In this document: piece after piece, positions 2,479-55,662 of the stretch
Layout of the letters: the number at the start of each line of letters is the position of its first letter
How positions within the stretch are numbered: position 1 is the stretch's first letter
Assembly: GCA_976226885.1 (NCBI GenBank)
Contig: OZ320322.1
Coordinates: 28,768,001-28,832,000 of the forward strand
Length of the DNA stretch: 64,000 nucleotides
DNA from: Iphione sp. A-MEVVRFRX5
Taxonomy: Eukaryota
Direction: 5' to 3'
The notes under the pieces: generated by a model
What the model saw: the letters and a program-made list of their open reading frames with translations, nothing else
Told to the model about the DNA's origin: nothing
The model's database searches: none
Made by a program: the position numbers and the translations under genes

Positions 2479-2560
2479 ACTTACCGATACACAACTAATA
2501 CGTAAGGGCTTGTCCAAACGCTTTATTCACTCACCTGAAAATAAATCAATGCAATTCATT
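2479..2560 (-). other. Candidate recursive splice site with 50-nt cryptic RS-exon (2534-2485)
   Basis: Minus strand reads ...TTGATTTATTTTCAG|GTGAGTGAATAAAG...GTGTATCG|GTAAGTC. The acceptor AG (2536-2535) is immediately followed by GTGAGT, and a second donor GTAAGT lies at 2484-2479. The 50-nt exon has stops in all three frames. Confidence 0.5.
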
Positions 2561-2599
2561 GTAATGGAGTCTGTGAAACTGCTTCCTCTCTTTAAACAA

Positions 2600-2752
2600 T
2601 GTATAATGAGTATCGACTACTCGAAAGCATGGGACAATGAATGGCATATCATTATTACTCTCTATTTATTCTCGCCTTTCAAAAGCATCCCTGATTACGA
2701 CGCTTTGGACAAAATCATTGAAAAACTATTTCTTTTTACAGGAAGACGACTA
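2600..2752 (+). mobile_element. Possible decayed non-LTR (LINE) reverse transcriptase fragment
   Basis: ORF 2510-2938 contains IDYSKAWDNEWH...FLFTGRRL. This resembles the LINE RT pattern DFSKAFDxVxH...FLxxRxQ with roughly correct spacing. No other RT motifs were recognised. Confidence 0.25.
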
Positions 2753-3752
2753 ATGACTATTTTGATTAAAATTCTTTTTGATGACCTAAATAAAAGTCCC
2801 GATAAATCCTACTGCAGATGTTTTCTCTTATTTAACATTTTATTGTTATGTAGCTTGTGTGTACGTTTTATTGGCGCGATAGCTTCCAGAACCGTATACA
2901 AATCTATTTGTCCGAGAAGAATTTGTCTTAGAGCATAGAAATACTTGTTCCTCACAGATGTCATAAAGAAATTTCCGAAGGTTTGTATACCAAACATTTC
3001 TGGGGAAAAAACAACTTCGTAAAAAATAACGCGTATAGCTGAAGGCGATAGATTTCATGGACGACGCGATTGACAACGCAAGTGTCAAATCATAGAATCA
3101 GAGCTGTCCAAAATTTGACAGAAGAAAATGGGCTGGGGAAAATCTGGAATGCATTTAAGCACCTGAAATTGTAAACGTGTATAGCTTATCTAAAAGCTAC
3201 TTTATCAAAGGAACTTTGTCTAAGTAGTTTGCCTTCGGCTTGTTCTAGTATGCAGATCACGGCATGGCCTGCCAGAATATGACCATTACTTGCCCCGAGC
3301 CTCCAAACAGAGAAAACCGCTAACGGATGCGGGTCCCTCTCAGCATCGGTAGCACACAACATTGCCCTGAGCAACTGGCGGCGCCGGAGAGTAGCTCCGA
3401 ACAGCTCTCAACGACTCGCCGAACACATCTCAGAGCAAATCCATAGCGCTGGAGTAGAGATCCGACTCGGAAGACATCATGAACATCGCTTGTAGCAGCC
3501 GTCGAGTACATCTAAATGTCAAGGCGACCCCTAGGGAGTGTTTCGTAATGTTTTCCTCGCGGAAGTATTAGCAAAAAGGCACGTCGGATATCTGTAGGTG
3601 GATGAATGGCGGGAAGACGTAGAAGTGTTTGTAAAGAAAATGTGGGGAAATTGTTTGCAGGTACACCGTGAGAACTTCGAGTCCTGGTGGAAAGCTGGTC
3701 TACATTGGCACAGCACATCCCGATTCCTGTTTACTCTGGGAGATTCTTCAAG

Positions 3753-3816
3753 TCTGTCTGGCCACCTGTCTGTCTGTCTGCCTGTCTCTCTCTATCTCTT
3801 TTTCTCTCTGGCCACC

Positions 3817-3890
<74 letters not shown>

Positions 3891-3912
3891 CCCCCCCCTC
3901 TCTCTCTCTCTC
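3753..3912. repeat. Compound microsatellite (TCTG)n/(TC)n with an internal 50-bp-period duplication
   Basis: TCTGGCCACCTGTCTGTCTGTCTG occurs at 3757 and again at 3807, followed by (TCTG)n and (TC)n runs. Confidence 0.95.
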
Positions 3913-4571
3913 ATCCGACCTCCCTCTCAATGTCCATTTCGTGACCGGAGTATATGTACATGTATCTCGTAATGAATTACGCATTTCCCAGTGCGTTATG
4001 ACTCTTGTATACGAGGGTACCATTTATCATTTGTGGAGGTGGTTGAATGAATATAATGTCCTTTCACTAATGCAGTGCGGTCCATTCAAGCGACGTCGGA
4101 CCAGAATCTGCTTCGGCACCGCGCGGAATACAGATTGGGAAATAAATGTCGGAATCTAGGCGGCAGAATAGACTGGCAGATAATGTGCTCAATTTGTGCG
4201 GCCACTGCCGGTGAGAATAGATGGAATGACTAACAATGCGCGGATGAAGCCTTCCGGTTGTAATCGGAGTGCGGGGAACCGGCTTGTTACATGGCTTGTC
4301 GTCTTAGAGCAGTTGTAGTAGAGCAGCACCTGGTGAAGAGCGCCTAGCGCCGATGATAATCGCCGCAGCGTAGGGGCAAGTAACGCAAGCCAGGAGATCA
4401 CCACGTCCTTTTAAAAAAAACGGAAGGAGAGAACGATAGGACAAGATGTGTGATTGGACCTTGTGGTACGCCGCGTGTAGCAAAGGGGAAGTAAATATGC
4501 ACTGTACTGTTTAACAGGCGAGATATGTGTGAGCAACTTGCAACCGTGTCGATGAATGTTACTGTTAAGTC

Positions 4572-4606
4572 TGTGTGTGTGTGTGTGTGTGTGTGGATGT
4601 GTGTGT
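4572..4606. repeat. (TG)n microsatellite
   Basis: Direct observation. Confidence 0.9.
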
Positions 4607-6883
4607 AACTCTATATGTACGCATGACACCTTGCTTCAGTGGCCTTGACACAAGAAGAATCTGACCACATCGCGAGGGCTATAACGTGAGCTCACTTCAT
4701 TGATTAGTGTCGCCAATAGGGGAGCACATTCGAACCACATTATAGCTTCGCCTATCATCGGAGTGCCATAAAAACCGCCCGAACTAAAAGGGCGCGCGGC
4801 GATAACACTGTTAAGTACACTACCCCGGGCGGGGCCGGTGAATGGGGCCGAGACGTGCCCAGAAAGCCGCTCCCTGGAGGCTCCTCGCCTGGCCAATGGT
4901 GCTAGCCACTCACCACGGTCACAATCGCAGCCAGTGCGCCTTTTCAGTCAAACGCCAAACATCGAGCGGCCATTGTTACCTTTCCGGTTGGTCTGCCGCT
5001 CCGACAGCTGTTGGCGGCTGGAAGAAGTATTCGGAAGATGTGGTGTATGGCGCTAAGAATTCTGGCGCGGGGGGTGGGGCGGTTATCCAGGAGGGATGAT
5101 GGTCAAGCCGTGCTGATCTCTACGCATATGTGTGTATGTATCACTGTAGCTAAGGAAGGAAGGCTTTCCCCTGTAGGTGTATGTGTGTGTGTGTGTACAT
5201 GTGTGTATGTGTGTGTGGGGGGGGCGAGTGTGAACAGAAAGGTAGTAGTCGCGGTAAGCTAAGGCGGGTGCTGGGCAGGCGGCACTGGGGTATGGGCCTG
5301 GTACGGTTAGACCCTGAATCAACCTTTCAGCTGGCGCTGAAGTCAATGCGGACTAGAGGAGCATTCATTCACATTCCACCACCGAAATAGGCCATCACCC
5401 GACGCCCGGACAGGTCCTGATTGAATCAGCCGACATCAAGGCCCAGGAGAACCGCTTCCTGCAGACGCTACCGTCACCAGCGGCGCGGCCCAGGACAGAC
5501 CGCCGGCTTGCCAAAGGCAGGCTAGTAGTTTATGAAATTGGGAGTTTTAATGGGGCGAATATGGCGTGACGTCTTTGCTTTAAAAAAAACACGCGTCGAC
5601 CATGTTCAAAAGTCTGCACATGCTCCAGTAACGCACATCTAGTGGCAAGCAATCATCGTGTGCCGACTGGCTCTTAGTTATAATCTGTAAGGTTGGATCC
5701 GACCAGCTTCTCCCACATTATTGTTAAATGACGCGCGCCTTTGATATGGCAAAAGGATGAGGGGGACATCGGAGCGGGGACAAAATCCCAATGCAAGCGC
5801 AACGTAGCGAAAAAAAACGATGCGTCTGTATGCAGAGAGATGATCATTCTTCTAGTTATCGTCGGGGGGTCACTTCGGACAGCCAGTGTGGGCTCTGAGA
5901 AATGGAAACTATTTAATGAATACTTGGGAATGGTATGGTGTGTGGTTTATTAAAGGTCTGCCATTCGTCTATATGCAGAGTTTTACTTAATATCTGCAAA
6001 GGCCCAGCGGGAACTATGATGGCATAAGTGACTCAGCAACATTCGTCCAGCCTATTTAGTGGGGCAACCGCAGAACTATCGAAATCTGGGTGTACATTTA
6101 GTTACATAAATGTAGTGTAAAGCCCCTTAAGGACATAAGTAAAACAGGAACACTTCGGGGGGAAAATACATTGCATTTTCTATATTACAGAAAGTATTAG
6201 ATTTGCATTATATACATTCACGTACTCCCTTTTGCAATGAGATCAGTAAGGAAAGCATAGGTCTACACACAAAGCAGAACGAATACAAAATTTATGATCA
6301 GTAAAGAGGAAACCTGAGAGTTTATAATTTTGAAAAGAAGCGATGACAGTGTGTAAGTTTGTTCATCCCGCATCGATATCGTACCTTACCATTTAAGATA
6401 AAGCGAAATGGCAGTGATATCACAGTGCCATCCCTTAGTTGATTTAATATGTCCCTAACCGTCATCTTTAACGGATAAACAAAAGTGATAAGACTTCAAT
6501 ATAATAATGAAAGCATTTCTAGAGCAAATCAGTTCCTACAGTACAAAAAGGATTACCCGACTGAAAAAGGGGAACACGAGCCTCGTCATCGAAAATAAAT
6601 GAACCGAAATTCTAATCATGCCGACAAGTGAAATAGGTTGTTTAGGCTGAGGACGCTTAATGAAGTAAGAGAAACCCGGGTGACTAGTCGACTGTCAAAG
6701 CAACTGTCAAGATGCTGATGTAATCTCTGACAGTAATGAAACAACGCCGGTCGTCTACCTGCCCGTCCGTCAAGTCGCTGCTCCCGCCGACATGGCCGAC
6801 AGGCGGCGCCGCCGTCGCCGCCTTTCACAAAACCCTAATGAGCGTGAAATGATTTTCCCCCGACTTTCATTACGAGAATGCTA

Positions 6884-8900
6884 CTAAGCACCACCGTCAT
6901 CTGTTTCCTCGCCGCAGGTCGAGATGCCTTCTTGATGACGTCGACGGAAAACCCGGTGAGGGGGAACGCAGCAGAGGCCGGCGGAGGTAAGGGGGGAAGT
7001 TGCGGTCAAGACGGTGTCGTACGGTGTTAGCAAGGCGATGACGATGTTTATCGTTGGGTGGTAGTCCCACGCGCCAGTGAAGGAGATAGTGATTGCTGAC
7101 GATAAAGGTGTTAACGGAGAGTGAAGTGCGGCGCTGGTGCTCGTCATTGTGTTTACGGGCATTGTGGTAGTTAGGTTAGAATCGGCGGTGGTGGAGGGGA
7201 ATAGTAGCCAAGTAGAACTAAAGGTGGCGGTAGCGGTTGGTGATGACGGTGGTCGGTAGTAGTAAGGGTTGTCGTACTGTAAAATTGACCGTGGAGGATA
7301 GTTGGGGTGATGTATCATTGCAACTGACTGAACTGACATCAGTGCTTTTAGCAGGTTTTCCCTGCTGGTTCTTGCAGGGGAAGTGGTAGGACCGATGATG
7401 TCAAACGGGGGCTTAATATCGCGACAATTACAGTATGCACTAGGGGTGCCTGTTTCCCCTGTGTTGTTGATGGTGGTAATTGACACTGTGGCGAAAGTGA
7501 CTGAGGCGGTGCTATGTGTGGTGCTGTTGCTGTTAGTCTTCTTGTTGTTGTTGTTGCTGTTGTTGGTGGTGTAGTGAAGTTGTCAAGGATCCTCTGTGTC
7601 CAGGTGATTCGTGGTAGTGGTGCATAGTAGACCTCACTGGGATTGTGATAATGTTTTTACTATGGGTTGGGTAAGTGGATGTGGAAATGGGCCCTCTGTC
7701 CTCTGTCATGTCGTGAATGGTGAGGACGACGATGGTGGTGGTGGTGGTGGTGGTGGTGATGGTGGTGGTGGTGGAGGTAGTGCTGGTGGTGCTGGTGGTA
7801 CTGCTGGTGGTGCTGGTGCTGGTGCTGGTGGTGCTGGTGGTAAGGGGCAGTGACAGAGGTAATGGCGGCTGGTGATAGTGGTGGGTAAAGGTGACGGTGG
7901 ATGCGGTGCTGGTGTTATTGCTATGACTACTGGTGTTGCTATTTCTGTTGATGGCGATGGTGCCAGGTGTAGTATTGGATTCACAATGCCCCGGACTAGG
8001 CGTGAAAGAGCTGCTGCTTATGGCTCGCTACAAGAATCTTAAGTTAATTCTTACTATATGGTGCAGGTTGTTATACCATGAGAAGGATCCGTACCGGCAG
8101 GGAACGCCAGCTACAGCCCTGGTTGGCGCTATGGTGATTCGGGAGGGACAGCGCCGATGGTAGCAGCTAGTCCTGCTCTCTTCATGCCGGGCGCCTTTAA
8201 AGTAATATTGTTGATGGTATGAGTAGGCTTGTCGGATTGGGTGTGGTCGCTGCATTCAGGGTTGTTGGGACATGGGCACTGGTTGGTTTAGGGAAAATGA
8301 TGCCGGCAACTATATTGTTCACAGAACTGATTGATGTGGCATTGCCTGCGTATATGTACCGTGATATATACCAGGATGACAACACCCTTGGTGGACCTGA
8401 CTGTGGCAGACAGGATTTATAGTGCTGGGGTCTGTGACACCCGTGACAGTGGTGGTGTGTGCGGTGCTGTTTACAGTAAAACTGGCAGTTGTAAAAGAAA
8501 TGGTGGCATGATTAAAGCGGGGATAGTAGCGGTGAGATTAGAGCCGGGGCCAATTTGGTGTGGCTTGAGTGTCGGTATGTATGATATCGATAGTACTGGT
8601 GTTGACAGTAGCAGAATTCTGACAGCACAGTGCTGGGAAAGGCCGTGGCGTTGGCAAAGATAGCGATAACGCTTGGTACGAGTATAGTTGACTTGACTAG
8701 TGAGCGGTAACAAGAGGGACAAAGGTGGGTGAATAGACTGAGTGTATGCTAACATGTCCAATCATATCGAGAGGGAAGAGGGGAAAGGAAGTGAACAGAG
8801 GAAGTCATGTCGGTACAAAGACACACTGAAGTCGATGTTGGGAGTAGTAGTGTTAGTATGTACTAACATTACCAACTACTACTATTCATAGTAGTAGCCG
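6884..8900. repeat. G+T-skewed low-complexity block containing (TTG)n at ~7543-7572 and (GGT)/(GCTGGT)n at ~7733-7840
   Basis: The plus strand is dominated by degenerate GGT/GTT/GCT/GAT triplets. Minus-strand ORFs are S/T/P-rich, switch frames and show no recognisable domain. Confidence 0.7.
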
Positions 8901-11364
8901 CCGTAGTAAAGAAGAGAAAAGAAGGAAGAGGAAACAACACTAGAGACCGGTATTGACGGGGAAGTGAAAAGAATACGGACACAAAATGAGTCCCAAGTTG
9001 GTGGGTATGGAGCAAGGCTTGCTTGCGGCAATGGCACGTATCGACATAACCGCCAGCGCCGGTAACGTTATGTCAATTCATATGAGAAAGCCTGGTCAAA
9101 TAGCGATCAAGACTAAGTCAAAATGGATGTAGTTGCCACTCTCAAAGAGGCCGAGAAACTACGACGATCTACATACTCGCGAGACATCCTATTCCGAAAT
9201 GAACGAAGCAAAGTGCTTGTAATTATTCTCCTGGGCTAGTGTCTGGAGAACCTAATAATTCTATATTACCTGTATGTGAAGCAAGGCTACACTAAAACAT
9301 TTCTAAATATGTGCAACTTCGGAATGAATGGACTACCATAGTGTTGTGATGGATGCTCCTTTCCAATTAGTCAAAGTGTTAACAATAATATCCCTATTCC
9401 ATTTATATCATCTGTGAATATGACCACCCTATATCATCTGTACATATCACAACAAACTTAAATATGTATTACAATTGATTGTACCTAAGAATCTGCACGA
9501 TAATGTATATATAAGTATCAGGATTGATTGATGAATATTTTATTCCAACAAGTCGCACCAAAGGTCGGTATTATCAGTGTGGAATTACAGCATCACAATT
9601 ATTTGTTTCACAATTTTTACAATACAAATACAATTTGAAAAAACGTCTTATACATGTAACTAAATTGAAGAGACAGTAGGAGATAGGCAGAAGAAAAAAA
9701 TAAGTGAAAAGTAAGAAGAGAGAAAAAAGAAAGAGTTTCAATTATGAATAAAGGCAATTAAAACAACGAAAATTTTACGGCGGACCGCTACAAGGCACAG
9801 TACAGGCATGTCATAATGTTTAAGGTATAACAATTATTTTACTCTCCTTCCATCAGGTTGGTGAATGGAAACATATTTAAAGCAATCATCACAATAATAA
9901 GATTAAATTCCACAATAAAAGAATACACGGCGATTATTGACTAAGAGAAAAAAGAGAGAGAGAGAGAGCGAGACAGAACACGAGAAAGCAGGAGATATAT
10001 GAATAAGGAAGCCGAGAGGGAAGGAGATGGAAGACCCAAAAGAAATGTAGTCTTATTATCAGACATTCTCCTAGCACATGACAGAGAGCGACACCTAACG
10101 ATAACAACTTCTAATCGTTGTCAATCCTTCTGGCCCTGGGTCATGTGAGACTTCAGGTAACTGATGGTACATCATTAACGACCACAAAAAGGACAGCGGA
10201 GTTCCAATAAATGTCGATGTGGGGTGTCAAATTATGAACATGTAACATCACCCAGCGGACGAGCCTTCATTCACTCTACCGCAGTGATTGTTGGGGGGGG
10301 GGTGAGGAGAGGCAGTCGCCCACACCTAGTGACAACGTGCTATAAGTGCAGGAAGTCATGGAGTGCCAAATGGATTTCGGAGGAGCAGACTGCATATGCT
10401 GTCGCATGATGCAGCTGCCGCCACGTCTATCATGGATGGTCGGGAGTATACGTGCGTCCTTGTACGTGCATGTGTGCGTGCGTAGCGTGCGACGCGAACG
10501 CGGCCGCCGTATATCTCATCAATGTCAGCCGGTGGGCAGGCCAGCCAAGCCGGAACAGTGCCTGTTCTCAGCCCCATTAGTCCCGCCGCGGAGAGCGGAC
10601 TGGCGTAATCAGAGAGACCTTTAGCGGAGCGACCCGGTTAGACAGTGTTGAGGGCTTCCCACTGATGACCTTCGGTGGTTCGGTCGAGGTACGATCGATG
10701 TCCTTGCTCGGACAGTGATGAGAAGTGAGGCAGTGATGGTGACAGGTTGTCATGTCCCACTCGTCTCCAAGGCCATTGACGCTCGATCCCTCACAGGCAT
10801 GCCTAACGAACGCACTCGCTTCCCCTTGGTTTTATTCTCTGACAGGGCAGGGGGTAGAGGTGGGGGAGGGGGAGGGGGTTAGCCCGCGGTTGCCGACAGG
10901 GATATTTTTTCCCTCTTTTCATTTTGATTTGTACCAGGCTCAGACAGGAGACTGAAAGGAGAAATTTAGTACCTTTTGTTGCTCAATGCAAAGATTACAC
11001 AGGAAGGAAATTGGCTGGAATGATCCTTACAAGCCATCCCTTTGGCTCGAAATGTAGGGGGAAAATTAGCAGATGAAGGGCAGCATTTTAAGATCTTCAG
11101 TTTAATTGTGACAGATATTCCTGCTTCAATTCAATTTTTCGTTCTTGTATTTTAACAGAAAAATTAACACATAATCAGAAACTTCATAACAAGCATGTTG
11201 AGCTGTAACACAACATCAGACTCCAGTTTGTTTTTTTAAATTACTTTCCATACCGTTCAATTATCACGAGTCACATTGCCCTTCTATCGGCAAATCTGAA
11301 ATCCACATTGACATTTCTAAAGAGTGCGGACTGATAATGATTACGCACAAGGACTCCAATATGA

Positions 11365-11377
11365 CCACCAGGTGGCA
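11365..11377 (+). promoter_or_regulatory. CTCF-type binding motif
   Basis: TGA-CCACCAGGTGGCA-ATA is a 13/13 match to the CCRSYAGRKGGCR core. Confidence 0.5.
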
Positions 11378-15917: not shown

Positions 15918-16083
15918 NNNNNNNNNNNNNNNNNNNNNNNNNNNNNNNNNNNNNNNNNNNNNNNNNNNNNNNNNNNNNNNNNNNNNNNNNNNNNNNNNNN
16001 NNNNNNNNNNNNNNNNNNNNNNNNNNNNNNNNNNNNNNNNNNNNNNNNNNNNNNNNNNNNNNNNNNNNNNNNNNNNNNNNNNN
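15918..16083. other. Assembly gap (166 N)
   Basis: Run of N characters. Confidence 1.
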
Positions 16084-16339
16084 TATGAATGTAGATTCTC
16101 GATTGTTTGTTTTATGTTATGCATACTGTATAATGTATACTCCCTCCTGCTGGACATACAGCAAATATGCATGAGCTATCGGAAGGGACTGTCCTTTTTG
16201 AGCGGGTGGGGTACCGGTGCTCTTGGGAGTACTCGAAGGATAAAGCAAATGCGCGGATGGAATTCTGACACCTTGTATAGATGCCAGATCTTGAATCCAT
16301 TTGAAAGGGAAATTAGCTGATATCCTGTCAACTTGCCAT

Positions 16340-16375
16340 CCACCAACCCACCCACCCACCCACCCACCCACCCAC
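16340..16375. repeat. (CCCA)n tetranucleotide microsatellite
   Basis: Direct observation. Confidence 0.9.
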
Positions 16376-27506: not shown

Positions 27507-27575
27507 ACCTACCAACTAGTGGGTTAACAGGGCAAGCAATGGATGATGATTACCTAGACAAAGCAGCACCACTCA
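27507..27575 (-). other. Weaker recursive-splice-like site with 41-nt cryptic exon (27553-27513)
   Basis: Minus strand reads GCTGCTTTGTCTAG|GTAATC...ACTAGTTG|GTAGGT. The 41-nt exon has stops in all three frames. The regenerated donor GTAATC is suboptimal. Confidence 0.25.
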
Positions 27576-34000: not shown

Positions 34001-34810
34001 GTGGTGATGTATAAGTGTGTGTGTGTGTGTGTCTGTGCGTTTGATGAAGCGCATGAGCTACAGGCGGACAAATAAGATGATGAAATAACGTTTGTAATCG
34101 GCAAAGCTGCGAAAATGGCACATAAAGCTGATGAGTCTGTTAATTGCTGGCAGTTCAACCTATAGTTATAACACTGGATGATGCCCGTGATAAAGGTCTG
34201 TGGAAAGGGGAGCAGCTGATCGAGGCCGGTGAAAAGGGAACAGAGGACTATAGTATGTATCCCTCTGTCGACCTGCACGTGCAGTTCTTGTTTCCGCTGT
34301 ATAAAATGTACGTTGAACAGAGTGTATGCGAGTGTGTGTACGTCTAAATGTCAGCAGTCATGAAATGTGCGTGCGTGCCTACACACGCGTCCGTGCGAGC
34401 GGGAAATGCACGTGGCCGCGTGATTCGGTGGAACCTAAAAGCATGAGCACGTGCGTTTGCCCTGTGCATGGTCGGCCATGCGCAAAAGTTAATCTTTTTT
34501 TTGTATCCTCGTGTGTGTATCAGCGCGTTCGTGTAGGGTGGGGTGTGTGTGTGTGGGGGGGTGATGCTTGTCAATGCGTTTGTTCGAAAATGTTTTTCAC
34601 GTATGCTACTCATAAGACGCACTACGCACTAGCGAACACGCGGAAGGCCGCTTCACGCACGTGTGTGTGGCTCTCTGCTAAGATAACTCCCCATCTGAAG
34701 CACTCCCCCCAAACCCTATGGGTGTGCCCATCAGCACTCGCCGTCGTAACAGATGTCATGTCATGCCCACATAGACATGCCCCTCCTGATTAGCTTCAGG
34801 TATCGAGACT

Positions 34811-34860
34811 CGACCGTCGGCGCATGCGTCATGACATGGCGGAAGTGGAAGCTGCAGGTC
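34811..34860 (+). promoter_or_regulatory. Housekeeping-type promoter motif cluster (NRF1, YY1-like, ETS/GABP) in a CpG island
   Basis: GCGCATGCG (34820-34828), CATGGCGG (34835-34842) and CGGAAGTG (34840-34847) are packed within 30 bp. The CpG-rich zone spans about 34330-34930. Confidence 0.45.
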
Positions 34861-35939
34861 GAGCGATGCTGAAGGCGTGGGCTTCATGGTCTGACCCAGT
34901 CTAAAGCGCAAGTGGCGAAGGTTTATGGCTTTGTTGCAAGACAAATTGGTTCATTACCGTTAAGTGCCTCAAATGAGCAGAATATGATTTTTCTATGAGC
35001 TTCATGTTCCCTCCCTTGCACGGTAGAACCTCTTTTTCTCATTCAGTCTCGTTCATTCTCCATAATGCTATTCGTTCCTTCCTTGTTCTTCAAGACCAGA
35101 AAAACTACTTTACATCAATCAACACTGATCACCTAAATGTATGTAAAACTAAAGGTATTCGTCCAAGGAAAACTGGGAGTCATTCGTATTATCTCTTACT
35201 TCACTTTTCCAGTTTTCAGATTTACATGTTTATCTCGTCTAATCAATAGAACTAGCTGAATACGTACAAATACGTTATTTTATAGATGTGGCACATATTC
35301 CAGATTCTAACCTGAAGCAGATACATCAGTGTGACCTAGATCCATCATCAGTAGATACCAAAGCATGCACATGGCTGCTTGTATCTACACTATCAGTCAA
35401 GTGTTCATAAACTGCTCCTGTCCGAGACTACACTACGAGGGTCTAACTGCAGTTTAACTCGAGTTCTGGCAAGTTTTCTGGTGCATATATAATCATGCAG
35501 CGCTCATCAAATAACCCTCGATACATATCTTTCCTATTTGTCTCATGAAAACGCCGGTCGGCTGTAAATAAACGGCGCGCTGCAACTCATAAAGGCTCAG
35601 GTCGTCTCCATCTGTCCCTGTCCGTTACCCATTCATCCTTCATTCAGGTTGAGCCTGGCGCCCGCCAGTGCCACTAACCGGACCGGCTGCCGGCGACCTG
35701 CAAGGCCTAGTCCAAGCCACACCTCGACTGGCCGTGTCCGTGGCTGCGTGCTGGGCGTGGTGGCTAATGTGGTCCCCGCCTGCCAGCTCCACCTCGCCAG
35801 CCACTGCTTTGGTAAGGTAATTTACGACCAGACTAACTCCAATCAAGTCATCGTTTTCTCGTCGGGGCCCTTTTTATCAGCCGTCCAGCGCGCCATATTT
35901 CACACCCAAGTTGTCGTGACTCGCCGTCCGTCCCAATCC

Positions 35940-37200
35940 CAACGATCCTGGTCGTCCTACCCACCACTTCCACCACTACCATCTGCCACCACATGCCACC
36001 ACCTACCACCAGCAGGTTCCCCCCACACCACCACCTCCCCACAAGCTAACCCCCACCGTTAGCAGCAGCAGCAGCAGTAGCAGCAGCAGCAGGCTCTTCC
36101 TCCCCTCACATGCCCGACACTGTTCACCGACCAAAGCCTCATCCTGCTCAACACATCAACCGCAGCACAACCGACACCCCCTCCCCCCCCGCCTCCCCAG
36201 CTCCACGGCCCTCAACCACCAACGCCAGGCTTGCTGCCTGCCACAACCTCCCCCCAGGCTTAGCCTCCCCCTGTGTCTCGTTGCCCATCACACATTCATC
36301 CCAGGGATTTGCACCAGCTCGTGGCGCTGTGCATCCGTCCGCGTCGGTTTTACCCGGCGCTGCTTTATCGCCGGCCGCACGCGCATTCCGTCACCGCAGG
36401 AGGATCTGCTGCCGTGTCAGCCGCTCGTCTCCTTTCTTTTCCAGCCCACGACATCCGTCCATCCCTCTCTCTCTCTCCACAAGCCTCCTCCTACTCCAAC
36501 CAACCAACCAACCATCGCCTCCCCCCTGCTCGCCCGCCAACCCGACCATCCACCTCCACCACCGCTACCGCCATCCTCAGCAACAGGAAGCTGAGGAAAA
36601 GCAGCAACGCCCCCTATTGTCACTATTCTAAGTAACACTCAAACCACGAACTCCAATGGTTTTTTTTTTCTTTTACAAAGGAACCAGCATCATGCCCAGC
36701 ACTATCAACATCCAAACTACTACCGCTATCACAATCAGAAAACACTAGTACCATCTCATACACCTAGTATTTCCAACAATGCGGCGTTAACAACCTGTTG
36801 TTCGAGACACACGTGCCTTCATTTAACTTCCACATCGTTCCGCAAAGTTATCACAAACAGGTGAAAACAGATATCGCCATGATCCGCACCTCAATTAGCG
36901 CTCCAAGAAAGGACTGCACACAACGGCAAAATTACCGATGGCAACATTGTCGAGTTACCGGACAGAAGCAACACGGCTACAGGCCCCAACGTGAATGAAA
37001 ATACCCATCGACACTATACACGCAGTAAAATATCGCAAATTTGGGCCTACTGAATACCATCATCAAGTCATTCTTTTTTATCTCTACACCACCACCACTA
37101 ACACCAATTCCTAATCAACGCCACAGCAGCTTGTGCATCCAGCATTTCGGGGTGAAAACCATTCCCAGCTATACTCCCCTCCAAACTCCAGCCTCATCCT
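35940..37200. repeat. C+A-skewed low-complexity block with interrupted (CAG)n at ~36060-36091
   Basis: The plus strand is dominated by CAC/ACC/CAG/CAA triplets. The overlapping ORFs are P/H/S-rich with no domain. Confidence 0.65.
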
Positions 37201-37901
37201 AGCGAGCCGTATCCGCACGGCCCCATCCCCCTCCGACGCAATGAAAATTTACACGTTCACACGTCGACAGGCGTTCCATCAACGTCCGTCCGTTGATTAG
37301 CAAATATGCACTAATTAATGGGCGTCGATGACGCTGAAGGATTGCCTATGACGACGACGGCTGCGCATTTTCGTCATTTTTTCCCCCACTCTGCTTTTGA
37401 GGATCATGTCTTTCGAAAGCCCAGCCAGTGCCGTCGACAGAGCAGTCATAACCACTATCAGCGCCGCTCCCAAAGGGACTACATGCTACTCATTTATTAG
37501 ACAACTATTCAAACACGCACGAAGAATGCGTAGATAGGAACAGATGCATATAAAGGCCGTTTGAAACAATAGGGACTGAAGATGGCCAGAGTAGCATGAG
37601 TAGTATATGCATGTACTCGGGCCGGTCTGAGTGGGTGGAAATTCAAAGCCAGCAATAGAGACGAACTTGTCCACGATCACATTGGGTGAGAAACGCGAAT
37701 GTGAGTTGTAATTCTATTACTTTAACATTTTAAAACGTACTGATTCGTAACAACATGGACGGTGAGGAAAAATGGCCTCAGTTTCCTTATCTGGCAAGCG
37801 TCTCGTGAGGCCAAGTAGTGTTCGACGCGACTCCCAAAATGCAGTTCTCGTGTAGTGAGAGGCTGCTGATGGACTAGGCCCTACCTCGTGGAGACAGCAG
37901 T

Positions 37902-37903
<2 letters not shown>

Positions 37904-37953
<50 letters not shown>
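37904..37953. repeat. (GA)n microsatellite, ~25 units
   Basis: Direct observation. Confidence 0.95.
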
Positions 37954-37956
<3 letters not shown>

Positions 37957-39708
37957 GGTACAAGGCATCTGAATTGCTCGCAGCCTGTTATATCAAATTA
38001 TGCTATGGTTTTAGTCCTCGGTACAACATCATATCACGTTCCATCGCAAGATTAATCTTCATTGAAAATGTAAAACGAGCCTGTAGACGCGACTCCAACG
38101 TCACGTACACTGAAAAAGCAACGGCACACACGAATTGGTTGAAAATCAATCTACGTGCCCTTAGGAGAAGCCAGACGCTGCCGTAAAAATGTTATATTTA
38201 TATTATAACATGTACCACCCTTCGCCTACTGTCTAGCTGGTAGTTGTGCCAGTATATGGAACCTCTTTTGTTTCTGTGTATTTTTTGTTGTTGTTTGTTT
38301 TTTTGGGGGGTGGGGGGGACCTGTGCCGGTGGGGTCATAAAACCAGACAATCAATAGTGTCTATGGTCGACACCTGGAGAACGTCAAAGGCAGAAGTGTA
38401 TAATAATTGGTGGAGGATGCGTGTGTGGAACAGAGCGCTTTGTTGTCCGGTAAAGTCACCTACCAATGACCTTGTCTGGTTGTACACATGTGTATATGCC
38501 AGTAATACTGCTTGAAGCTACTTTGGAGCCTAAAGTATGTGGGGAAGAGGGGGACGGGCGACCTCAAGCTTTGATCGGGCTCCCCGCTCATGTGCGCAGG
38601 AACGTGTGAGTATATTAGTAGTATTGCTTCAAATGGGGCACCTTAGAGCTTGTCACGGGCTGGCGTGACTCTTAGAGGACAGCGGTAAATCACACGGAGC
38701 ATACGATTCGTTTGATGACGCACGCAATGATAGAATCAGGTCGGAGCAGAATGGCTGGCTTTCAGACAGTCATTGGCGTCCTTTCCCTTGGCTGCTTCCT
38801 TTTATACAACTATCAAAAGCATTCGTTCTGCCTTTACCTCCAGGTGGCAGTTTGCAAGGCTGGGCCACCGTGTCTCTTGGTTATGGCTGGAGTTGTTTAC
38901 AGTTGTAATGGTGCTCCACTTCAAGGTATCACCCGGCCCTCTTTTAAAAGTGCCTCCAGTCGTGGCCCTCTCACTCCGCTCGGCCTGGGATGGCCTGCCT
39001 GGCGAGCTCTTAACCCAGAACACATGAAAGGTGTGGTGTAACACAAAATAACCCTTTTTTGTGGGTGCTCCTCCCAGGCAGCGGCTTTTATAACTCCTTC
39101 AATGCAGGGGTAAAGTGGAACCGAAAAAAAGGGGATGAGGGTCAAACGCCTCGTGGGCGGCGGGAGTAGGTGGGTGGGTGGGGGGTGGGGTTGCGGCCAA
39201 AGGCAGCGTGTGTCTTCAGGGCTGGAAGGCACGAAGCGTGTGGAAGAAAGGTTCTGAAATCACAGCGATAAGGATGCCATGTATGAAAAAGAAAGATACA
39301 ATGGAAGGATGATTGTCTCACCTGTTCGGGTACAATAAATCAGCGCCTTAAGCATGTGAGAGGGGGCAGCTCCCTCACTCGGCGCCGCCGCCGCCGCCGC
39401 CGAGTACAACAGCAACCAATTTCCCTGGCCGCACTAAGTAACGCACCCGTATCACGTTACAATCCCCGACTACCTGCCGGCTTAACCGTTCAAATCTCCT
39501 TGCCTCTTCTAATCCATAATTCCCTCGCAGACGAGGGGGAAAACCACCATAGGATTAATTTTTCAAATCATGCAAAGGATTTTTTTTGCGTTCTAACAAA
39601 GTGTCGATTTCTAAAATATACATGGTTGGTAAGGGAGACGACGGGGTCCCAAAAAATATAAATGAATGTTTATAAAACGTCGGGGAGTTTTTTTTCCTCC
39701 TCCTCAAG

Positions 39709-39895
39709 CGACATCTGTCAATAAAGATGTAAATGGAAGCGCTGACCGTAAGGAGAAGCAGAACGTGAGCAAAGGTGAAGGTCGCAGCAAGGTCACGCCT
39801 GCTGCGACACCTACCTGGGTGGGCGCCGTGATCAATGTTCATTTCAGGTCAGGTGTCAACAAGCGAATGGCCATGGTGAATGGGCAGGCATGGAG
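39709..39895 (+). CDS. Candidate exon 1 of a phase-compatible two-exon segment, unknown product
   Basis: The tract TTTTTTTTCCTCCTCCTCAAG| precedes an open frame (TSVNKDVNGSADRKEKQNVSKGEGRSKVTPAATPTWVGAVINVHFRSGVNKRMAMVNGQAW) that ends at GAG|GTAAT. Confidence 0.22.
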
Positions 39896-39963
39896 GTAAT
39901 AAAGCAGAAACCGTGTTCTTTACAAAGGTACCCTAAGTGTTCTTTTTTTTCATACGATACCAG

Positions 39964-40084
39964 CGCCACCTCCCTTTCACCGTGCTCAAAGGTCTTCACC
40001 ATTGGCCACGTGCGGTCGGAAGTTCATGTCAACGGCACCATTGCTGAAGAGGCCTCCGTTTACGCTCTATTGACAATGTTATGA
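39964..40084 (+). CDS. Candidate exon 2 (terminal) of the same segment
   Basis: The 68-nt putative intron 39896-39963 has GT, a CTAAG branch-like site, a T tract and CAG. Splicing keeps the frame: ...AW-S-ATSLSPCSKVFTIGHVRSEVHVNGTIAEEASVYALLTML*. Confidence 0.22.
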
Positions 40085-41869
40085 TTATCTATCTCTTTTA
40101 GCATCTTTTTACAGGTAATAGACCAAAAAAAAACATTCCAGGTTATGTGCTATACAAGTCGAAATTGTCCTGCATTCCTTTACTTAGGTACCACATTCTG
40201 TCCGTGACAACGACTTAGTTATGAGGGGTCACGCAGACTTGGGTTTAACCATATGAATAAACAGTGCAGTGCTTTTTTTGTCTTGAGACACCGACTGCCG
40301 CATAATTTTGGGCCTCGCAAGACACACTAGCGTGATAGACGGCGACAGGGAAAAGAGTGCGGCTCAAAAGTAGGAGACAAAGTGCGGGTGGAACGTGCGT
40401 AAAAGCTTGGCCAAGTGAGTGATCAGGGGCAGGGCTTGGGGTGAGTGATGTCCACTGGCGTGGGATAACACCCTGGTAGATCCACTGAGCTTCCCGCATG
40501 TTGCCCGGAGAGTGGCACAGACCCTCACACGCACACGGCCGTCCCCTCATAAACAAATAATGGCCGATTCATTAGACCCCTTGGCGGCCACGAGCAAGCC
40601 GGGAACAGTCTAAATTTGGAGACCCCCGTCTGTCGACATGACAATGACGTAGTGCCCAGGCTAAGTCCGGGCTAACCTCCAGCCTGCTCCAGTTGGTGAG
40701 GACCTCCCCGCACTCCGCCGCCCCCTTAATCTTATTCCTGTCACCTAATATGGGCCTTAATCTGCAATGCCCTCTACCTCGGCGGGCGAGGCTGGCCATT
40801 ATGTGTATCTCTGCACGGAGGGACATTCATTTCGCCCGTGATAATCTGTTAGATTTATTAAAGCCCTGGATGGGTCGGGGATGGGTGGGTGGATGGGGTT
40901 GGGGGTGGGGGTCAGGGACACAATGATAGATCAGATGGATTGAATAATGATGACCGTCATAAAGACCTCCCCTGCTGTACGGGAGGTCTCTTCCATCACG
41001 GCCTAGTTAATATTGTTAATTCTCTGGCAGGCTTTGCCACTCCAGCTAACTACGCCTCATACAAAGTGTGCGTGAGCCACTTACATAAGATGGGAAGGCT
41101 GGACACTACAAATGGCTGCGGGCCCACAGGAGGGTAACCAAATATACCCCCTGATAACAAAAGAGCATACAAAAGCTACTGTCCGCTACAAAAGTGTGTG
41201 GGTCCTCCTTTAGGCAACGCTCGATATTTATGTCTTTATACTGATGGTTGCAAGCATGCAATGGAAGGCGAATAAATCTCCTCCTAGCTTTCTACCCCAT
41301 CCTTCTTCCTGTTCTCAACTCCAACTCGGCCGCTGCTCTCCTTGTATCGGGTCGCTATTCCCTCACGCCCCTCCCGTATACTATACCTATTAGATTCTCC
41401 TACCATTTCTGGCTGAGCAACTTGCGGCGTTCTTCGGATAAACGGTCAATTTGATTGAATGATCGTTGTAAATCGAGTTGGGTAAACCACTCTTCTGTCG
41501 CAGCAAGGCGACCAGCTTTTGTAAACACATTTTGCACACAGCTCTAACGCCGAGGAAATTGACGGCCGGTCCAAACTAAACACAATGTCCTCCCCATTTT
41601 AACTTGCAGGCGTTCCATTTAAGATACTTTGGGTGAAGGATCTGAATTCTATTATTTCCGTGCAATTCCCTTTACGCTTTGTCTCCCTAACCCGAGGAAG
41701 TAGCATGAAGATTACATTATGGCCAATATAGTTGAATTCTGCGGTGATTACAAAAGCAGCGCTTGTATTGTCAGCTCATTCACATGCAGTCATACGGTTG
41801 ATTTCGTCAAGGAAGATAGGAACTCCTTTCTACAATTATGAAGACCGAAACTCTGCAGTTTGTGGATAG

Positions 41870-41945
41870 GATCGTGAATTTTAAAAACATGACGACAGCT
41901 TCCATCTTTTCACACTTATGACATTTTCTCTCCTCATCACAATCA
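41870..41945 (-). mobile_element. Possible LINE ORF2 C-terminal zinc-finger remnant
   Basis: Minus strand reads DEERKCHKCEKME and then, with one frameshift, SCRHVF. This fits Cx2C...E[ST]xxHxF. The final Cys is not seen. Confidence 0.3.
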
Positions 41946-43640
41946 CGCATTAGAGTCGTCCAAAATGTAAAATATCTAAATGCTCATCTGTAAAAAGTTT
42001 AGGCTTGGCACTATGACGGATAGTCTACATAATTATCTCCCACAAGATGATGCATTATATATGTAGGAATGCACAGAGTTCATGGAGTTGGACCTCGTCA
42101 AAAGGCTAACTTGATTTGCGAGGTGAAAGAGCCCAAACCACCGACACCGTAAGTCATTGACCTTTACCAAAAATACACGTCAACTCTCCCTATCGCTAGA
42201 CATTCTCAAAAGACTACTAGCCTGCTTCACGAATATTATACGGTTGTCTGGCGAGGTGTCCAGCACTGACAACAACTGAGAAAGCTGGTTTGTTCAACTA
42301 GCATTCCTAAAATTGATCCCCACACACCTGCGACATAAATCAGACGTGGGAGCTCCCCCCCCGCCCCCGACCGGGCCTGACCTCTGACCTCCTGCATCAA
42401 CAGGTTGCGGCTAGATTGTGTTCATAGTCAGACAACGGTTTATACACAGCGACGTCAGGGCTCATAGCCTCGGGGGCCCTGGCGGAGAAACCCCACATCT
42501 TCTTACGGTTATAGAACTGTCAGGAGTGTTAGATTTTTACCTTGGCCGCCTCCGGCGCGGTGAACATAACGACAGGCTGATGGAGATAGATTTTGGTGCG
42601 AGATCGTCCTATGGACCGCCACTCAGATGTATATTTATGGTGACGCTTAAGTCTTAAAATGATCTGCAATGCATCAGTGTCTCCAGCTTCAGTGACTTTA
42701 TTGAGAACAGGGGCGGTCCATGCGAGAAAAAAAACCTTACATAAAAATGTTGAAGGTCAAGTCACATCTATTACAGACTTTAATATTTCCCGGCGAGCGA
42801 CTGCCATGTGATTGATGGTAAGGTAATTATCGACAGGTAACAGTTATATGTTGCAGCGAGGAGTGTAACGGACAGAAAAACAGGGGGTCCCCCCTTTGCT
42901 ATGATCACATGTCGTGTTCCAGCATGCAAGGCAACCTTCCGTCAAGCGACTGCGTCACAGTTAATCGAGCTATCACTGCCGGGCGGCGAGCCAGTGGGGG
43001 ATCCAACTGACGGTGTCAAACAGCATGCCACTGACATACTGCCAGTCGCAGTATGGGTCAACGAACTAACTCAGGCAAACTATTGCATGTTTGGCGAGAA
43101 GCTCGATATGTGTGTATGGAGGGAGGGGGGGTAAAAGGCTTCTGAGAAATAGCTTTCGTCAGATAGAAAGGAGGCGTATTACGAGCATTGCTGAGCATGA
43201 ACGTGGGCGATATTTTCCAACCAAAAAGCCAGTAGAATATGCTCATGGAATTCGCAGTTGCGTGCGAATATGGAGCGTATATTGTTTTTATTCACCACTG
43301 TGTGTAATACTTCACTGCGGTCAGGCTGTCGCAAAGACAAACATAGTTGATAACAAATGGGCGAACGGTATCAGTATCTTCGTGCAGATATACTACAGAA
43401 AGATCAGCATAATGAACATAACATGAATTTAACAATTAGTGTAATGAATATTAATCAATTCGAATTAATGCGCCGTCTCGGAAATTTATATTCGAGGAGA
43501 CGTGTGCCCCGCGGATCTGTGTTTTGTCCTGTATTCTTTCCTTCTCCCGGTGGTCTTTCCGTGCGTTTTAAAAGTTGCTCCATTAAAGTTGTACGGGCCA
43601 CTCGATCAAACCAACCGTAATAGGTGCATTTGACAGCGTC

Positions 43641-43713
43641 GTAACCTTGGCGACCGTTGTCAGAACCATCTGGTAGGCTGTCACAAACACATGCCGATGG
43701 TTGCCATGGAAAT
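43641..43713. promoter_or_regulatory. Pair of RFX X-box-like motifs
   Basis: GTAACCTTGGCGAC (43641-43654) and GTTGCCATGGAAAT (43700-43713) are near-matches to the X-box GTTGCCATGGCAAC / GTNRCC-n-RGYAAC. Confidence 0.4.
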
Positions 43714-44199
43714 AGAGCAGAGACCATCGCAAGTCCAGAGGCCAAAAGGCAAGAAATCAATGGAAGCTCCAGCGAAGCCTTGTTGGTATTGAACATTAAG
43801 CCTGCTAATCGGTTGTGCTCTAAAATACGGAATTATATGATCACTGTTAACACTCCTCCTGGCAGGGATTATATAAACAGTATTCTTCCCGAGGCTAATA
43901 CCATCAACGCCGACTTGTTTCCACCTTTGAAGGACGCCTCGAAACTGGAAACCAATTTGATTAGGAATCAGAAGGGTGTGCTCTCATTTAATCATATCTC
44001 GGCGTGAAGAACCTGACAAGTGTTACAACACAGAACATCAAAAGCGCCGCTTTCTTATCGGTCTGTTTGCTGCCGCGATTGGAAAAACAAATGGAAGCCA
44101 CTATGACTGAGTTTCAAAAGGGCTTCAAGTTGCTGGCTTTTCAGCGTTTAGTAGTGGGCATAAGAACACATGGCGTTGACAATTTCGATTAAAGCCGGA

Positions 44200-44640
44200 G
44201 CAATAGGAGAAACAATGCGATTTTCAGGGCGGGGTAAGATGATCGGCCGTCGATCTGTGTTAATCCCTGAATGCAATCACAGCGACACGGTGGCCGGCGC
44301 GACAAGGAGATAACCACATCGACTTCAAAGCAGATCAAAGAGATACCACACGATTAGCCCGCGCATGCGCGACAATCACGTGACTTTCATTTATTAATTT
44401 CCACGTAATTATCGGCGTGGCGCAGGCGCGTCCCTCCATCGGCGCGATAACGGCGGACGCCGCTAAAGTTTCCGCCCGAGAGGCGACGGCGCGGTGGTCG
44501 TTTCCACGCGACAGGAAACGTTCACAAATCGCACGTAATGGCAACGAGAAGTGGTGCTAGAGGCGGGAAGAGCCGCATTAGTATCTCGTATATATCGGCG
44601 GGATATGATAGGTCAGGTGTTCTTCGATGAGAGGCGGACC
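44200..44640. promoter_or_regulatory. CpG island with a perfect NRF1 site and tandem TCF/LEF-type sites
   Basis: Dense CpG, GCGCATGCGC at 44361-44370, TTCAAAG at 44324 and ATCAAAG at 44334, and CACGTG nearby. Confidence 0.45.
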
Positions 44641-46491
44641 AGTAAATACTCATGGGCGCTATGTTCCGAGAGACAGAATGTAATTAGATCTGACACCAAG
44701 AAGGACGTTTTTCATCATTACGATTGGCTGTCTTTCTCTATTCTCGCGACTATTGTCTATAAACTATGGCCACATGTACGCACTTAGGGGAAATTAATGC
44801 CGTAATCCCTGGTGATAGAACGAATGCTTGTACACTAATCATGAGGTCAGATGATTTCTTTCTATCTGAGCCATCCGAAACTTTTGAATTGATTAAAACC
44901 TGCAGATCACTTCTTATTGTTGGAATTTGATGCAAGTCGCTAATGACAAAGAGAGAGGCGTACTACAACAGGTCCTGACTAAATATTTTGCGGATATGTC
45001 CTTGCTTTCAGAGGCAGGGATCAACTATTGTATTACATGTATGCAATTCGGTGGTGCACATGAGATTCAATAAGCATTTGAGGTTCGCCTGTGATAGATC
45101 TGTTGGATCATGTAGGAAGCCTTCCCATGTACACGTTTAACCGTTTCATTTGCATTGCCATGACATCTGAGAATGACCTGAAACGTACTAGAACCTAACC
45201 TGTCTGTTCATAGTGCATATGTCAAGGTAAGCCTGACTCAGATCATGCGTCAACCGACTTTTGTCCAACCAGATGCATGGGCATGACGGCTGTCAATTTG
45301 ATTTCAACAGCAGCAGTTCTCTACCTGGGCATTTTGAGGTCATTGTGTCTAGTGTAGTAAAACATACAGTCTGCAACATGAGGGTACGGGGATTTGGCAA
45401 TTAAGATAAAGCGGACACCATTGTCCGAAACGTGTACGTGGAAGAGCTGCCTTCTTCCTAATGCCTCCCATCGGTCCATTTGCGCCAAAAGTCACATCCC
45501 ATAGAGGATTACTTTGCAGTGTAGATACGGGCATTGATATAGCTTTGCCGTACGACATGTATATATACATGTACATGTATATAATATTGTTTATGGGTCA
45601 TGATTGTTATTTACTTTTCCTATTATTTCATATCTTCCATATTGTTCCCCTGGGTATTCCGAATTATACACCTTGACATTAGTACGACTCCAGTGGCTGA
45701 TACTGGCAATGAAGCAATACGCACTTTCAATGACCTTTCGCTCCCAATTCAAGGCAGCTCTAGATGCCACAAAGGACATCCTGAATTGATTCAGTCGAGA
45801 CGGCGCATACGTTATGAATCGGTACAACTGAGGTCAACTCAGTTGGCCTTATGAAACCATGGCCATACTCTTCGCAGAACAACATTATGAGTCGTTCCAG
45901 AAAAGCCCATTAACACAACCATGAGGTGAGGTCGCGTACAGCTCCATAATTTGGACATCTGGGTAAATGCTCACCATCCGTTGTCTTATCCAAGTTATAT
46001 TTTATACATGTATATTTGTTAACATGTACCGTACACTGACGGAGACATAGGTACACAGATGTACAGTGTACATTTGGATTATCATTTCCTTCCGAACTGA
46101 CCAGCAATGCTCTACACTTGTTTTGAATGAATTTAATAGATAGATACCCCTAGTGATAGGTTCTGTTCCTAATGGCTGAGGCCCACGTAGTACTTACTAA
46201 TGAATCGATAAATACTTAACAGAATAGTCATGCTACTAACTCTGTGATACATGCGTATGTATTTTCCTTTCTTAGATTTTTTAAAAATATGTTTTGCCAC
46301 TTTGACAATAGATATCCCACGTGATATTAGTATCAAGTATGACCAGGTAAGTGTTTCGTCAGCATCTAAGTTTTTTTTCAAAGTCTGGTCCCCGCTCTGC
46401 CTTTTTCTGCGTTCTGATCATGACAGCTATCTCATACCATCTTTATGATCTTTTGACATGGACATATCGATTTGGTGATATACAAAAAGTA

Positions 46492-46554
46492 ACTTACCAC
46501 AGCAGGGGGACGTCTCAATTATTAACAGGACTCACCTGGAAAGAGACAAATATG
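46492..46554 (-). other. Candidate recursive splice site with 38-nt cryptic RS-exon (46535-46498)
   Basis: Minus strand reads CATATTTGTCTCTTTCCAG|GTGAGTCC...CCTGCTGTG|GTAAGTT. The 38-nt exon has stops in all three frames. Confidence 0.55.
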
Positions 46555-55647: not shown

Positions 55648-55662
55648 AATAGTAGTAGTGGC

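What the first reader, a model, noticed from the sequence alone, without database searches (positions are those of the whole stretch)
2479..46554. Series of candidate recursive-splicing (ratchet) sites with poison RS-exons on the minus strand
Seen: only three CAGGTRAGT 9-mers were found by eye in the window. Two are on the minus strand (AG at 46537-46536 and 2536-2535), each directly preceded by a pyrimidine tract and followed 38 or 50 nt later by a perfect GTAAGT donor. A weaker site of the same design is at 27553. All three short exons contain stops in every frame. The spacing is about 19 kb and 25 kb, and no convincing minus-strand coding exon lies between them. Established: recursive splicing in Drosophila and in long mammalian genes uses 3'ss|5'ss junctions defined through short, usually PTC-containing cryptic exons. 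Inference: this window is one giant minus-strand intron removed stepwise, in a lineage where I am not aware that the mechanism has been described.
Basis: partly seen in the sequence, partly recalled or inferred. Interest (0 to 1): 0.8.

Follow-up and report, generated by a model that had tools for sequence, protein, structure and literature searches.

The report
Two candidate recursive splice sites
Two spots 44 kb apart on the minus strand of a gene-poor stretch of an invertebrate genome carry the full sequence layout of fly-type recursive (stepwise) intron-splicing sites, more than chance explains, but no RNA data, host gene or related species could be obtained to show that they are used.

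Summary
Two of the three claimed sites are real and stand out. At 46536 and 2535 on the minus strand, a pyrimidine tract plus CAG is fused to GTGAGT. A perfect GTAAGT donor follows 38 or 50 nt later, and the short exons between have stops in every frame.

Of all 462 AG|GT sites in the window, only these two combine a good acceptor, a good donor and a strong downstream donor. About 0.005-0.009 such sites are expected by chance. Both also have long AG-free zones upstream.

The third site (27554) ranks 31st of 462 and is background. The bare count of CAGGTRAGT 9-mers is not significant. So this is a pair, not a series.

The layout matches the published Drosophila ratchet point with a cryptic RS-exon of about 50 nt. 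No sequencing run was listed, so transcription, strand, junctions and intron status are untested. I found no coding exon of 60 aa or more on either strand. No host gene or orthologous locus could be obtained, and an unresolved assembly gap lies between the two sites.

The same scan has already flagged similar sites on other pieces of this genome, some reported as conserved in Fat-like and Dachsous introns.

Verdict: a plausible but unproven new member of a known kind.

The parts
46538..46582 (-). Acceptor region of site A. It is a 45-nt AG-free zone ending in the pyrimidine tract tttgtctctttcc (46550-46538). A branch point is presumed inside it but was not mapped.
   Evidence: The AG-exclusion zone is 45 nt against a median of 11 for all AG|GT sites; only 8% of sites reach 45.
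46530..46537 (-). Site A ratchet core AG|GTGAGT. AG is at 46537-46536 and the regenerable donor GTGAGT at 46535-46530.
   Evidence: It ranks 1st of 462 AG|GT sites, with acceptor score 6.4 and donor score 4.5.
46498..46535 (-). Site A candidate RS-exon, 38 nt, with stops in all three frames.
46492..46497 (-). Site A downstream competing donor GTAAGT.
   Evidence: The U1 duplex is -9.1 kcal/mol. The regenerated ratchet donor gives -9.2 to -12.2 if the upstream exon ends in G.
2537..2570 (-). Acceptor region of site B. It is a 34-nt AG-free zone ending in the pyrimidine-rich tract tgatttattttc.
   Evidence: The AG-exclusion zone is 34 nt; 14.5% of sites reach 34.
2529..2536 (-). Site B ratchet core AG|GTGAGT. 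AG is at 2536-2535 and the donor at 2534-2529.
   Evidence: It ranks 3rd of 462, with acceptor score 4.1 and donor score 4.5.
2485..2534 (-). Site B candidate RS-exon, 50 nt, with stops in all three frames.
2479..2484 (-). Site B downstream competing donor GTAAGT.
   Evidence: The U1 duplex is -9.3 kcal/mol. The regenerated ratchet donor gives -10.0 to -13.0 if the upstream exon ends in G.
27507..27575 (-). The claimed weaker site: tgtctAG|GTAATC, a 41-nt stretch, then GTAGGT. I judge it not distinguishable from background.
   Evidence: It ranks 31st of 462, with acceptor score 0.8, donor score 0.4 and an AG-free zone of 16 nt.
15918..16083 (.). Assembly gap of 166 N, length estimated, lying between site B and the other sites. 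Continuity is untested.

Best explanation
The two modules at 46536 and 2535 on the minus strand are most likely functional recursive splice sites (ratchet points) of the fly type. They would sit inside a long intron, or introns, of an unidentified minus-strand transcript.

Inferred mechanism:
1. The acceptor and the GTAAGT donor 38 or 50 nt downstream together define a short cryptic RS-exon.
2. The upstream exon is spliced to the AG.
3. That step regenerates a donor, exon|GTGAGT, at the junction.
4. The regenerated donor pairs with U1 as well as or better than the RS-exon donor. It is therefore used next, which removes the stop-filled RS-exon together with the following intron segment.

What is shown is the sequence layout and its excess over chance. 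Transcription, the order of the steps, skipping of the RS-exon and membership of one intron are all inferred.
For: - Both sites have a pyrimidine tract, CAG|GTGAGT and a perfect GTAAGT 38 or 50 nt downstream.
- They are the only two of 462 AG|GT sites with a strong acceptor, a strong donor and a strong downstream donor. The expectation is 0.005 to 0.009, so P(2 or more) is about 1e-5 to 4e-5. That gives about 0.05 over the 712 windows x 2 strands read in this genome.
- The AG-free zones upstream are 45 and 34 nt against a median of 11.
- The RS-exons are stopped in all frames.
- The two modules are not copies of one repeat.
- Both lie on the same strand, with none on the other.
- The regenerated donor is predicted to be equal to or stronger than the RS-exon donor for any upstream exon ending in G. 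This is the condition for skipping in flies (PMC8605326).
- The layout matches the published fly ratchet point with a cryptic RS-exon of about 50 nt. It also matches the enrichment of strong donors after recursive sites (PMC6110457).
- No coding exon of 60 aa or more was seen in the window.
Against: - No RNA evidence of any kind: no run was listed.
- The host gene, the intron boundaries and even the strand of transcription are unknown.
- No orthologous locus was obtained, so conservation is untested.
- There is no strand asymmetry in composition, and AATAAA is not depleted on the minus strand (33 plus, 44 minus).
- The segment between the two sites is 44 kb, much longer than the 9.1-kb mean of fly recursive segments.
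- An assembly gap separates the two sites.
- The feature definitions were partly set after seeing the sites. Across the roughly 250,000 windows of the whole scan, some chance pairs are expected.
Confidence: 0.5

Rival explanations
1. The modules are real splice signals but are not recursive. They would be short non-coding, UTR, poison or lncRNA exons, or dual-use AG|GT sites serving as a donor in one isoform and an acceptor in another. The exons would be included or alternatively used in an unannotated minus-strand transcript and not removed by re-splicing.
For: The acceptor + 38/50 nt + strong donor layout is also that of an ordinary short exon. The RS-exon donors are perfect GTAAGT and could win the competition if the upstream exon ends poorly (-5.5 to -6.3 kcal/mol with a non-G exon end). 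Expressed exons that begin with a donor motif are common in vertebrates (PMC8605326, PMC6224609).
Against: An ordinary exon begins with GTRAGT only about once in 2000 by chance, yet both do here. Stops in every frame and lengths not divisible by 3 (38 and 50 nt) argue against coding cassette exons. In flies this exact layout is nearly always recursive.
Confidence: 0.25
2. This is a chance co-occurrence of splice-like motifs in untranscribed or intergenic DNA. It was picked out because the reader searched many windows for this pattern.
For: The 9-mer count alone is not significant. The third site is noise. There is no evidence of transcription or strand bias. A plus-strand exon-like module with a perfect CAG|GTAAGT sits only 150 nt from site A, which shows that such motifs occur on both strands. 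Scan-wide, about 250,000 windows were read.
Against: The full architecture is expected 0.005-0.009 times per window and is seen twice on one strand. Independent extra features agree with function: the AG-free zones and stops in all frames. Corrected for the windows read in this genome, the expectation is about 0.05.
Confidence: 0.15

Closest known systems
Drosophila intronic ratchet points with cryptic RS-exons (Hatton 1998; Burnette 2005; Duff 2015; Joseph 2018; Joseph & Lai 2021, PMC8605326; Pai 2018, PMC6110457)
   Same: Both have a (Y)nCAG|GTRAGT core, a short cryptic exon of about 50 nt closed by a second strong donor, out-of-frame stop-filled exon content, a ratchet donor predicted at least as strong as the RS-exon donor, and a location in a long stretch free of coding exons.
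   Different: No RNA intermediates, saw-tooth coverage or conservation are shown here. The organism is not an insect; earlier unchecked notes call it mollusc- or worm-like. The 44-kb segment is far longer than the 9.1-kb fly mean. The donor is GTGAGT and not the fly-preferred GTAAGT.
Vertebrate recursive splicing through RS-exons (Sibley 2015; Blazquez 2018, PMC6224609)
   Same: Both rely on exon definition of an RS-exon beginning with GURAGU. Inclusion of the exon would act as a poison exon with premature stops.
   Different: In vertebrates most RS-exons are annotated, included exons held in place by the exon junction complex, and only a few sites are fully cryptic. Which applies here is unknown.
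Computationally inferred ratchet-site enrichment in large introns of non-fly invertebrates (Shepard et al. 2009, PMC2773006)
   Same: The evidence is of the same kind, namely motif excess on one strand. The density here is 2 per 64 kb, or about 3 per 100 kb. The paper reports 0.5 (sea urchin) to 2.2 (fly) per 100 kb in large introns, against about 0.1 on the complementary strand.
   Different: That study used annotated introns genome-wide. Here there is one unannotated window, and the sense strand is assumed.

Membership tests
Recursive splice site (ratchet point) with cryptic RS-exon | Juxtaposed strong 3' and 5' splice sites, (Y)nNCAG|GTRAGT | tested here: met
   Met for 46536 and 2535 (ranks 1 and 3 of 462). 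Not met for 27554, which ranks 31st with donor GTAATC.
Recursive splice site (ratchet point) with cryptic RS-exon | A second 5' splice site a few tens of nt downstream that defines a short RS-exon (about 50 nt in flies) | tested here: met
   GTAAGT lies at +38 and +50. Only 2.4% of AG|GT sites have such a donor 25-100 nt downstream.
Recursive splice site (ratchet point) with cryptic RS-exon | RS-exon is non-coding or out of frame (premature stops) | tested here: met
   Stops occur in all three frames, and the lengths of 38 and 50 nt are not multiples of 3.
Recursive splice site (ratchet point) with cryptic RS-exon | Regenerated ratchet donor competes successfully with the RS-exon donor | tested here: inconclusive
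   U1 duplex energies favour or equal the ratchet donor if the upstream exon ends in G: -9.2 to -13.0 against -9.1 and -9.3 kcal/mol. The upstream exon is unknown.
Recursive splice site (ratchet point) with cryptic RS-exon | Lies on the sense strand inside a long intron of a transcribed gene | not testable with these tools
   No annotation and no RNA run were available. No coding exon of 60 aa or more was found on either strand, which is compatible with a long intron but equally with intergenic DNA.
Recursive splice site (ratchet point) with cryptic RS-exon | Splicing intermediates: exon-to-ratchet junction reads, lariats from the ratchet donor, saw-tooth nascent RNA coverage | not testable with these tools
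   The look-up of sequencing runs listed no run, so read laying could not be used.
Recursive splice site (ratchet point) with cryptic RS-exon | Evolutionary conservation of the AG|GT core amid poorly conserved flanks | tested here: inconclusive
   No orthologous locus could be fetched. ORFs overlapping the sites are not on record and have no homologues. Of the two metagenome scans, one gave nothing and the other one false positive.

The most novel reading that the evidence does not exclude
The two sites are working recursive splice sites in a spiralian (mollusc- or annelid-like) animal, dividing an intron of more than 44 kb. No experimental report of recursive splicing in molluscs or annelids was found in the held library. 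Together with the similar sites the scan flagged in Fat-like and Dachsous introns of the same genome, this would extend fly-type, RS-exon-mediated recursive splicing to a third major bilaterian branch and argue that it is ancestral to bilaterians.
Probability: 0.45. Interest if true: 0.5.

Novelty: new member of a known kind. Interest (0 to 1): 0.33.

Why it matters
Recursive splicing has been shown experimentally only in Drosophila and vertebrates. For other invertebrates there is only motif-enrichment evidence (PMC2773006). Genuine sites in a spiralian genome would show that the cryptic RS-exon mechanism is widely shared among animals with long introns. They would also give concrete coordinates (46535 and 2534, minus strand) for a junction-read test.

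On its own this window adds little. It offers two more sequence-only candidates, with no host gene, in a genome where the scan already holds better-anchored cases.

Tried and rejected
- **RNA evidence.** The look-up of sequencing runs on 41600-51500 listed no run.
- **Rfam.** No family matched at the gathering threshold.
- **Repeats.** Only simple repeats were found. The sites are not in a dispersed repeat, and the modules are not homologous to each other.
- **Coding exons.**
  - Pfam on the 10 longest ORFs gave nothing.
  - A codon-periodicity scan of all ORFs of 60 aa or more flagged only trinucleotide repeats.
  - The word search found no homologue for the 232-aa ORF at 6887-7582(-) or for the 80-aa ORF over site A.
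  - Splice-site-bounded open exon candidates on both strands look random.
- **Orthologous DNA.**
  - Exact look-ups of ORFs overlapping the sites found nothing.
  - The first metagenome scan gave nothing.
  - The second gave L001, which blastn and alignment show to be a seed-driven false positive.
- **Strand-of-transcription proxies.** GC/AT skew and AATAAA counts were uninformative.
- **Gap continuity.** The flanks do not overlap, so it is not testable.
- **Earlier notes.** They hold nothing on neighbouring genes and nothing on RNA confirmation.
- **Literature.** I found no substantive paper on recursive splicing in molluscs or annelids.
- **Not attempted.** A Pfam scan of all roughly 580 ORFs of 50 aa or more, because it would have needed very long typed reference lists.
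- **Taxon.** It was not determined here.
Full report
**Observation**

The window holds exactly three CAGGTRAGT 9-mers: two on the minus strand (2529-2537 and 46530-46538) and one on the plus strand (46344-46352). That count is unremarkable. The expectation is 1.11, and 10 of 100 dinucleotide shuffles give 3 or more.

Reading the minus strand confirms the described layout at two sites:
- tttgtctctttccAG|GTGAGT, followed 38 nt after the AG by GTAAGT.
- tgatttattttcAG|GTGAGT, followed 50 nt after the AG by GTAAGT.

The intervening 38-nt (46535-46498) and 50-nt (2534-2485) stretches have stops in all three frames. The third site at 27554 is tgtctAG|GTAATC with GTAGGT 41 nt later. Its short exon is also stopped in all frames.

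**Is it more than chance?**

AGGTRAGT occurs three times on each strand. Only the two minus-strand sites also have a pyrimidine tract and a GTRAGT 25-100 nt downstream.

Second-order Markov simulations that keep local composition gave 0.00875 such full modules per strand-window (800 strand-simulations). That means P(2 or more) is about 4e-5, or about 0.05 after multiplying by the 712 windows x 2 strands read in this genome.

I also scored all 462 AG|GT sites on both strands with generic acceptor and donor weights from my own textbook-level frequencies, not species-specific ones. The two sites rank 1st and 3rd. They are the only sites that combine acceptor 4 or more, donor 4.4 or more and a strong downstream donor. 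If those three features were independent, 0.005 sites would be expected.

Both sites also have long AG-free zones upstream, 45 and 34 nt against a median of 11. Real acceptors are expected to have this.

Site 27554 ranks 31st of 462 and fails even lenient thresholds, and no further minus-strand candidate appears when thresholds are relaxed. The finding is therefore a pair of strong sites, not a series or ladder.

**Surroundings**

The window looks non-coding on both strands:
- There are no Rfam families and no dispersed repeats, only microsatellites.
- The 10 longest ORFs have no Pfam domain.
- No ORF of 60 aa or more shows codon periodicity, apart from trinucleotide repeats. The median chi-square of 6.3 is what non-coding DNA gives.
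- The longest ORF (232 aa, 6887-7582 minus) and the ORF overlying site A have no homologues.
- Exon candidates bounded by good splice sites are few and look random on both strands.

It fits intergenic DNA just as well as an intron.

Base skews and AATAAA counts (33 plus, 44 minus) give no hint of the transcribed strand. The two modules share nothing beyond the splice motifs, so they are not copies of one element.

**The gap**

The 166-N gap at 15918-16083 lies between site B (2535) and the other sites. Its flanks do not overlap, and the 5 kb on either side have the same GC content. Nothing more could be tested without reads.

No reading frame is at stake. Two things do depend on the scaffold join: the 25-kb and 44-kb spacings, and the assumption that both strong sites lie on one molecule.

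**RNA and comparative evidence**

The look-up of sequencing runs listed no run for 41600-51500. Nothing can therefore be said about transcription, strand, junctions, lariats or saw-tooth coverage.

Attempts to reach an orthologous locus through the ORFs that overlie the sites also failed:
- Exact look-ups found nothing.
- The word search found nothing.
- One metagenome scan found nothing.
- The other returned L001, which has no DNA similarity to the window (best blastn E = 3.7) and was a seed-driven false positive.

**Mechanism**

The layout is that of the fly ratchet point as now understood. An SA|SD junction is followed by a short cryptic RS-exon ("~50 nt") and a downstream donor. The RS-exon is recognised by exon definition and then skipped, because the regenerated ratchet donor out-competes the RS-exon donor. 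Its content is poorly conserved and out of frame (PMC8605326). Strong donors are enriched after recursive sites (PMC6110457).

Here the U1 duplex energies of the RS-exon donors are -9.1 and -9.3 kcal/mol. After the first splicing step the ratchet donor would reach -9.2 to -13.0 kcal/mol if the upstream exon ends in G, as most do. It would reach only -5.5 to -6.3 kcal/mol otherwise. Skipping of the stop-filled exons is therefore the likely outcome, but this is inference.

The 44-kb segment between the sites is much longer than the 9.1-kb fly mean.

**Comparison with what is known**

Recursive splicing has been shown in Drosophila and vertebrates. [quoted passage not shown] Two sites in 64 kb fit that range.

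I found no substantive paper linking recursive splicing with molluscs or annelids in the held library. I did not determine the taxon myself. Earlier unchecked notes on other pieces of this genome call it mollusc-type or worm.

The same scan has already flagged similar sites elsewhere in this genome. Follow-ups reported conserved ratchet motifs in Fat-like and Dachsous introns, and another window had three candidates with no host gene. These raise the prior that the lineage uses the mechanism, but they are AI notes that I did not test.

**Verdict**

Every sequence hallmark is met, but transcription, intron status and conservation are untested.

My probabilities:
- About 0.5: functional recursive sites.
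- About 0.25: real but non-recursive short exons or dual-use sites.
- About 0.15: chance.

It is a new member of a known kind. Interest is modest, because the mechanism is known, the evidence is sequence-only, and better-anchored examples exist in the same genome.

Noticed in passing
window:46276-46352 (+): A plus-strand exon-like module: acceptor tattttcctttcttAG, a 71-nt body open in one frame, then a perfect CAG|GTAAGT (the third 9-mer). It lies only about 150 nt from the minus-strand site A. It could be chance (roughly 0.14 per strong donor) or a sign of plus-strand or bidirectional transcription.
   Followed up: partly
window:6887-8027 (-), within the G-skewed stretch 4000-10000: Two overlapping long minus-strand ORFs (232 and 164 aa) rich in Thr/Ser/Pro/His lie next to a (TGG)n array at 7733-7841. 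GC skew on the plus strand reaches +0.26. There is no Pfam domain and no homologue, so they are probably a compositional artefact. A low-complexity nested gene is not excluded.
   Followed up: partly
window:35568-36640 (+): A C/A-rich stretch (GC skew -0.24) where all three plus-strand frames stay open over 36264-36591, with ORFs of 224, 193 and 123 aa. This looks like a composition effect, not coding. It is one of several GC-rich islands (30-31.3 kb, 36-38 kb, 50-52 kb) that might be regulatory.
   Followed up: partly
window:3751-3912 and 60522-60613: (CTGT)n/(CT)n and (AG)n/(ACAG)n microsatellites form arms up to 97% complementary, 56.6 kb apart. Other long arrays are (GTA)38 at 55646-55758, (TCC)29 at 56508-56594 and (GA)25 at 37904-37953.
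   Followed up: no
window:1355-1364 (-): A third minus-strand AGGTAAGT (G of the AG at 1362) with a perfect donor half but a poor acceptor (gatgAG) and no downstream donor. It could be an ordinary donor about 1.2 kb downstream of site B.
   Followed up: partly
window:62933-62960 (+), 50716-50745 (+), 9836-9864 (+): Very strong acceptor-like tracts fused to weak GT (for example ttcttctttttttcgcccAG|GTGAAC). These are acceptor-only signals on the plus strand, of unknown meaning.
   Followed up: no
L001:1380-1484: Metagenome contig Ga0126333_1082296 was returned as a 'relative' of the ORF over site A (43% identity over 35 aa). It shares only a 12-nt seed and has no significant DNA similarity, so it is a false positive.
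   Followed up: yes
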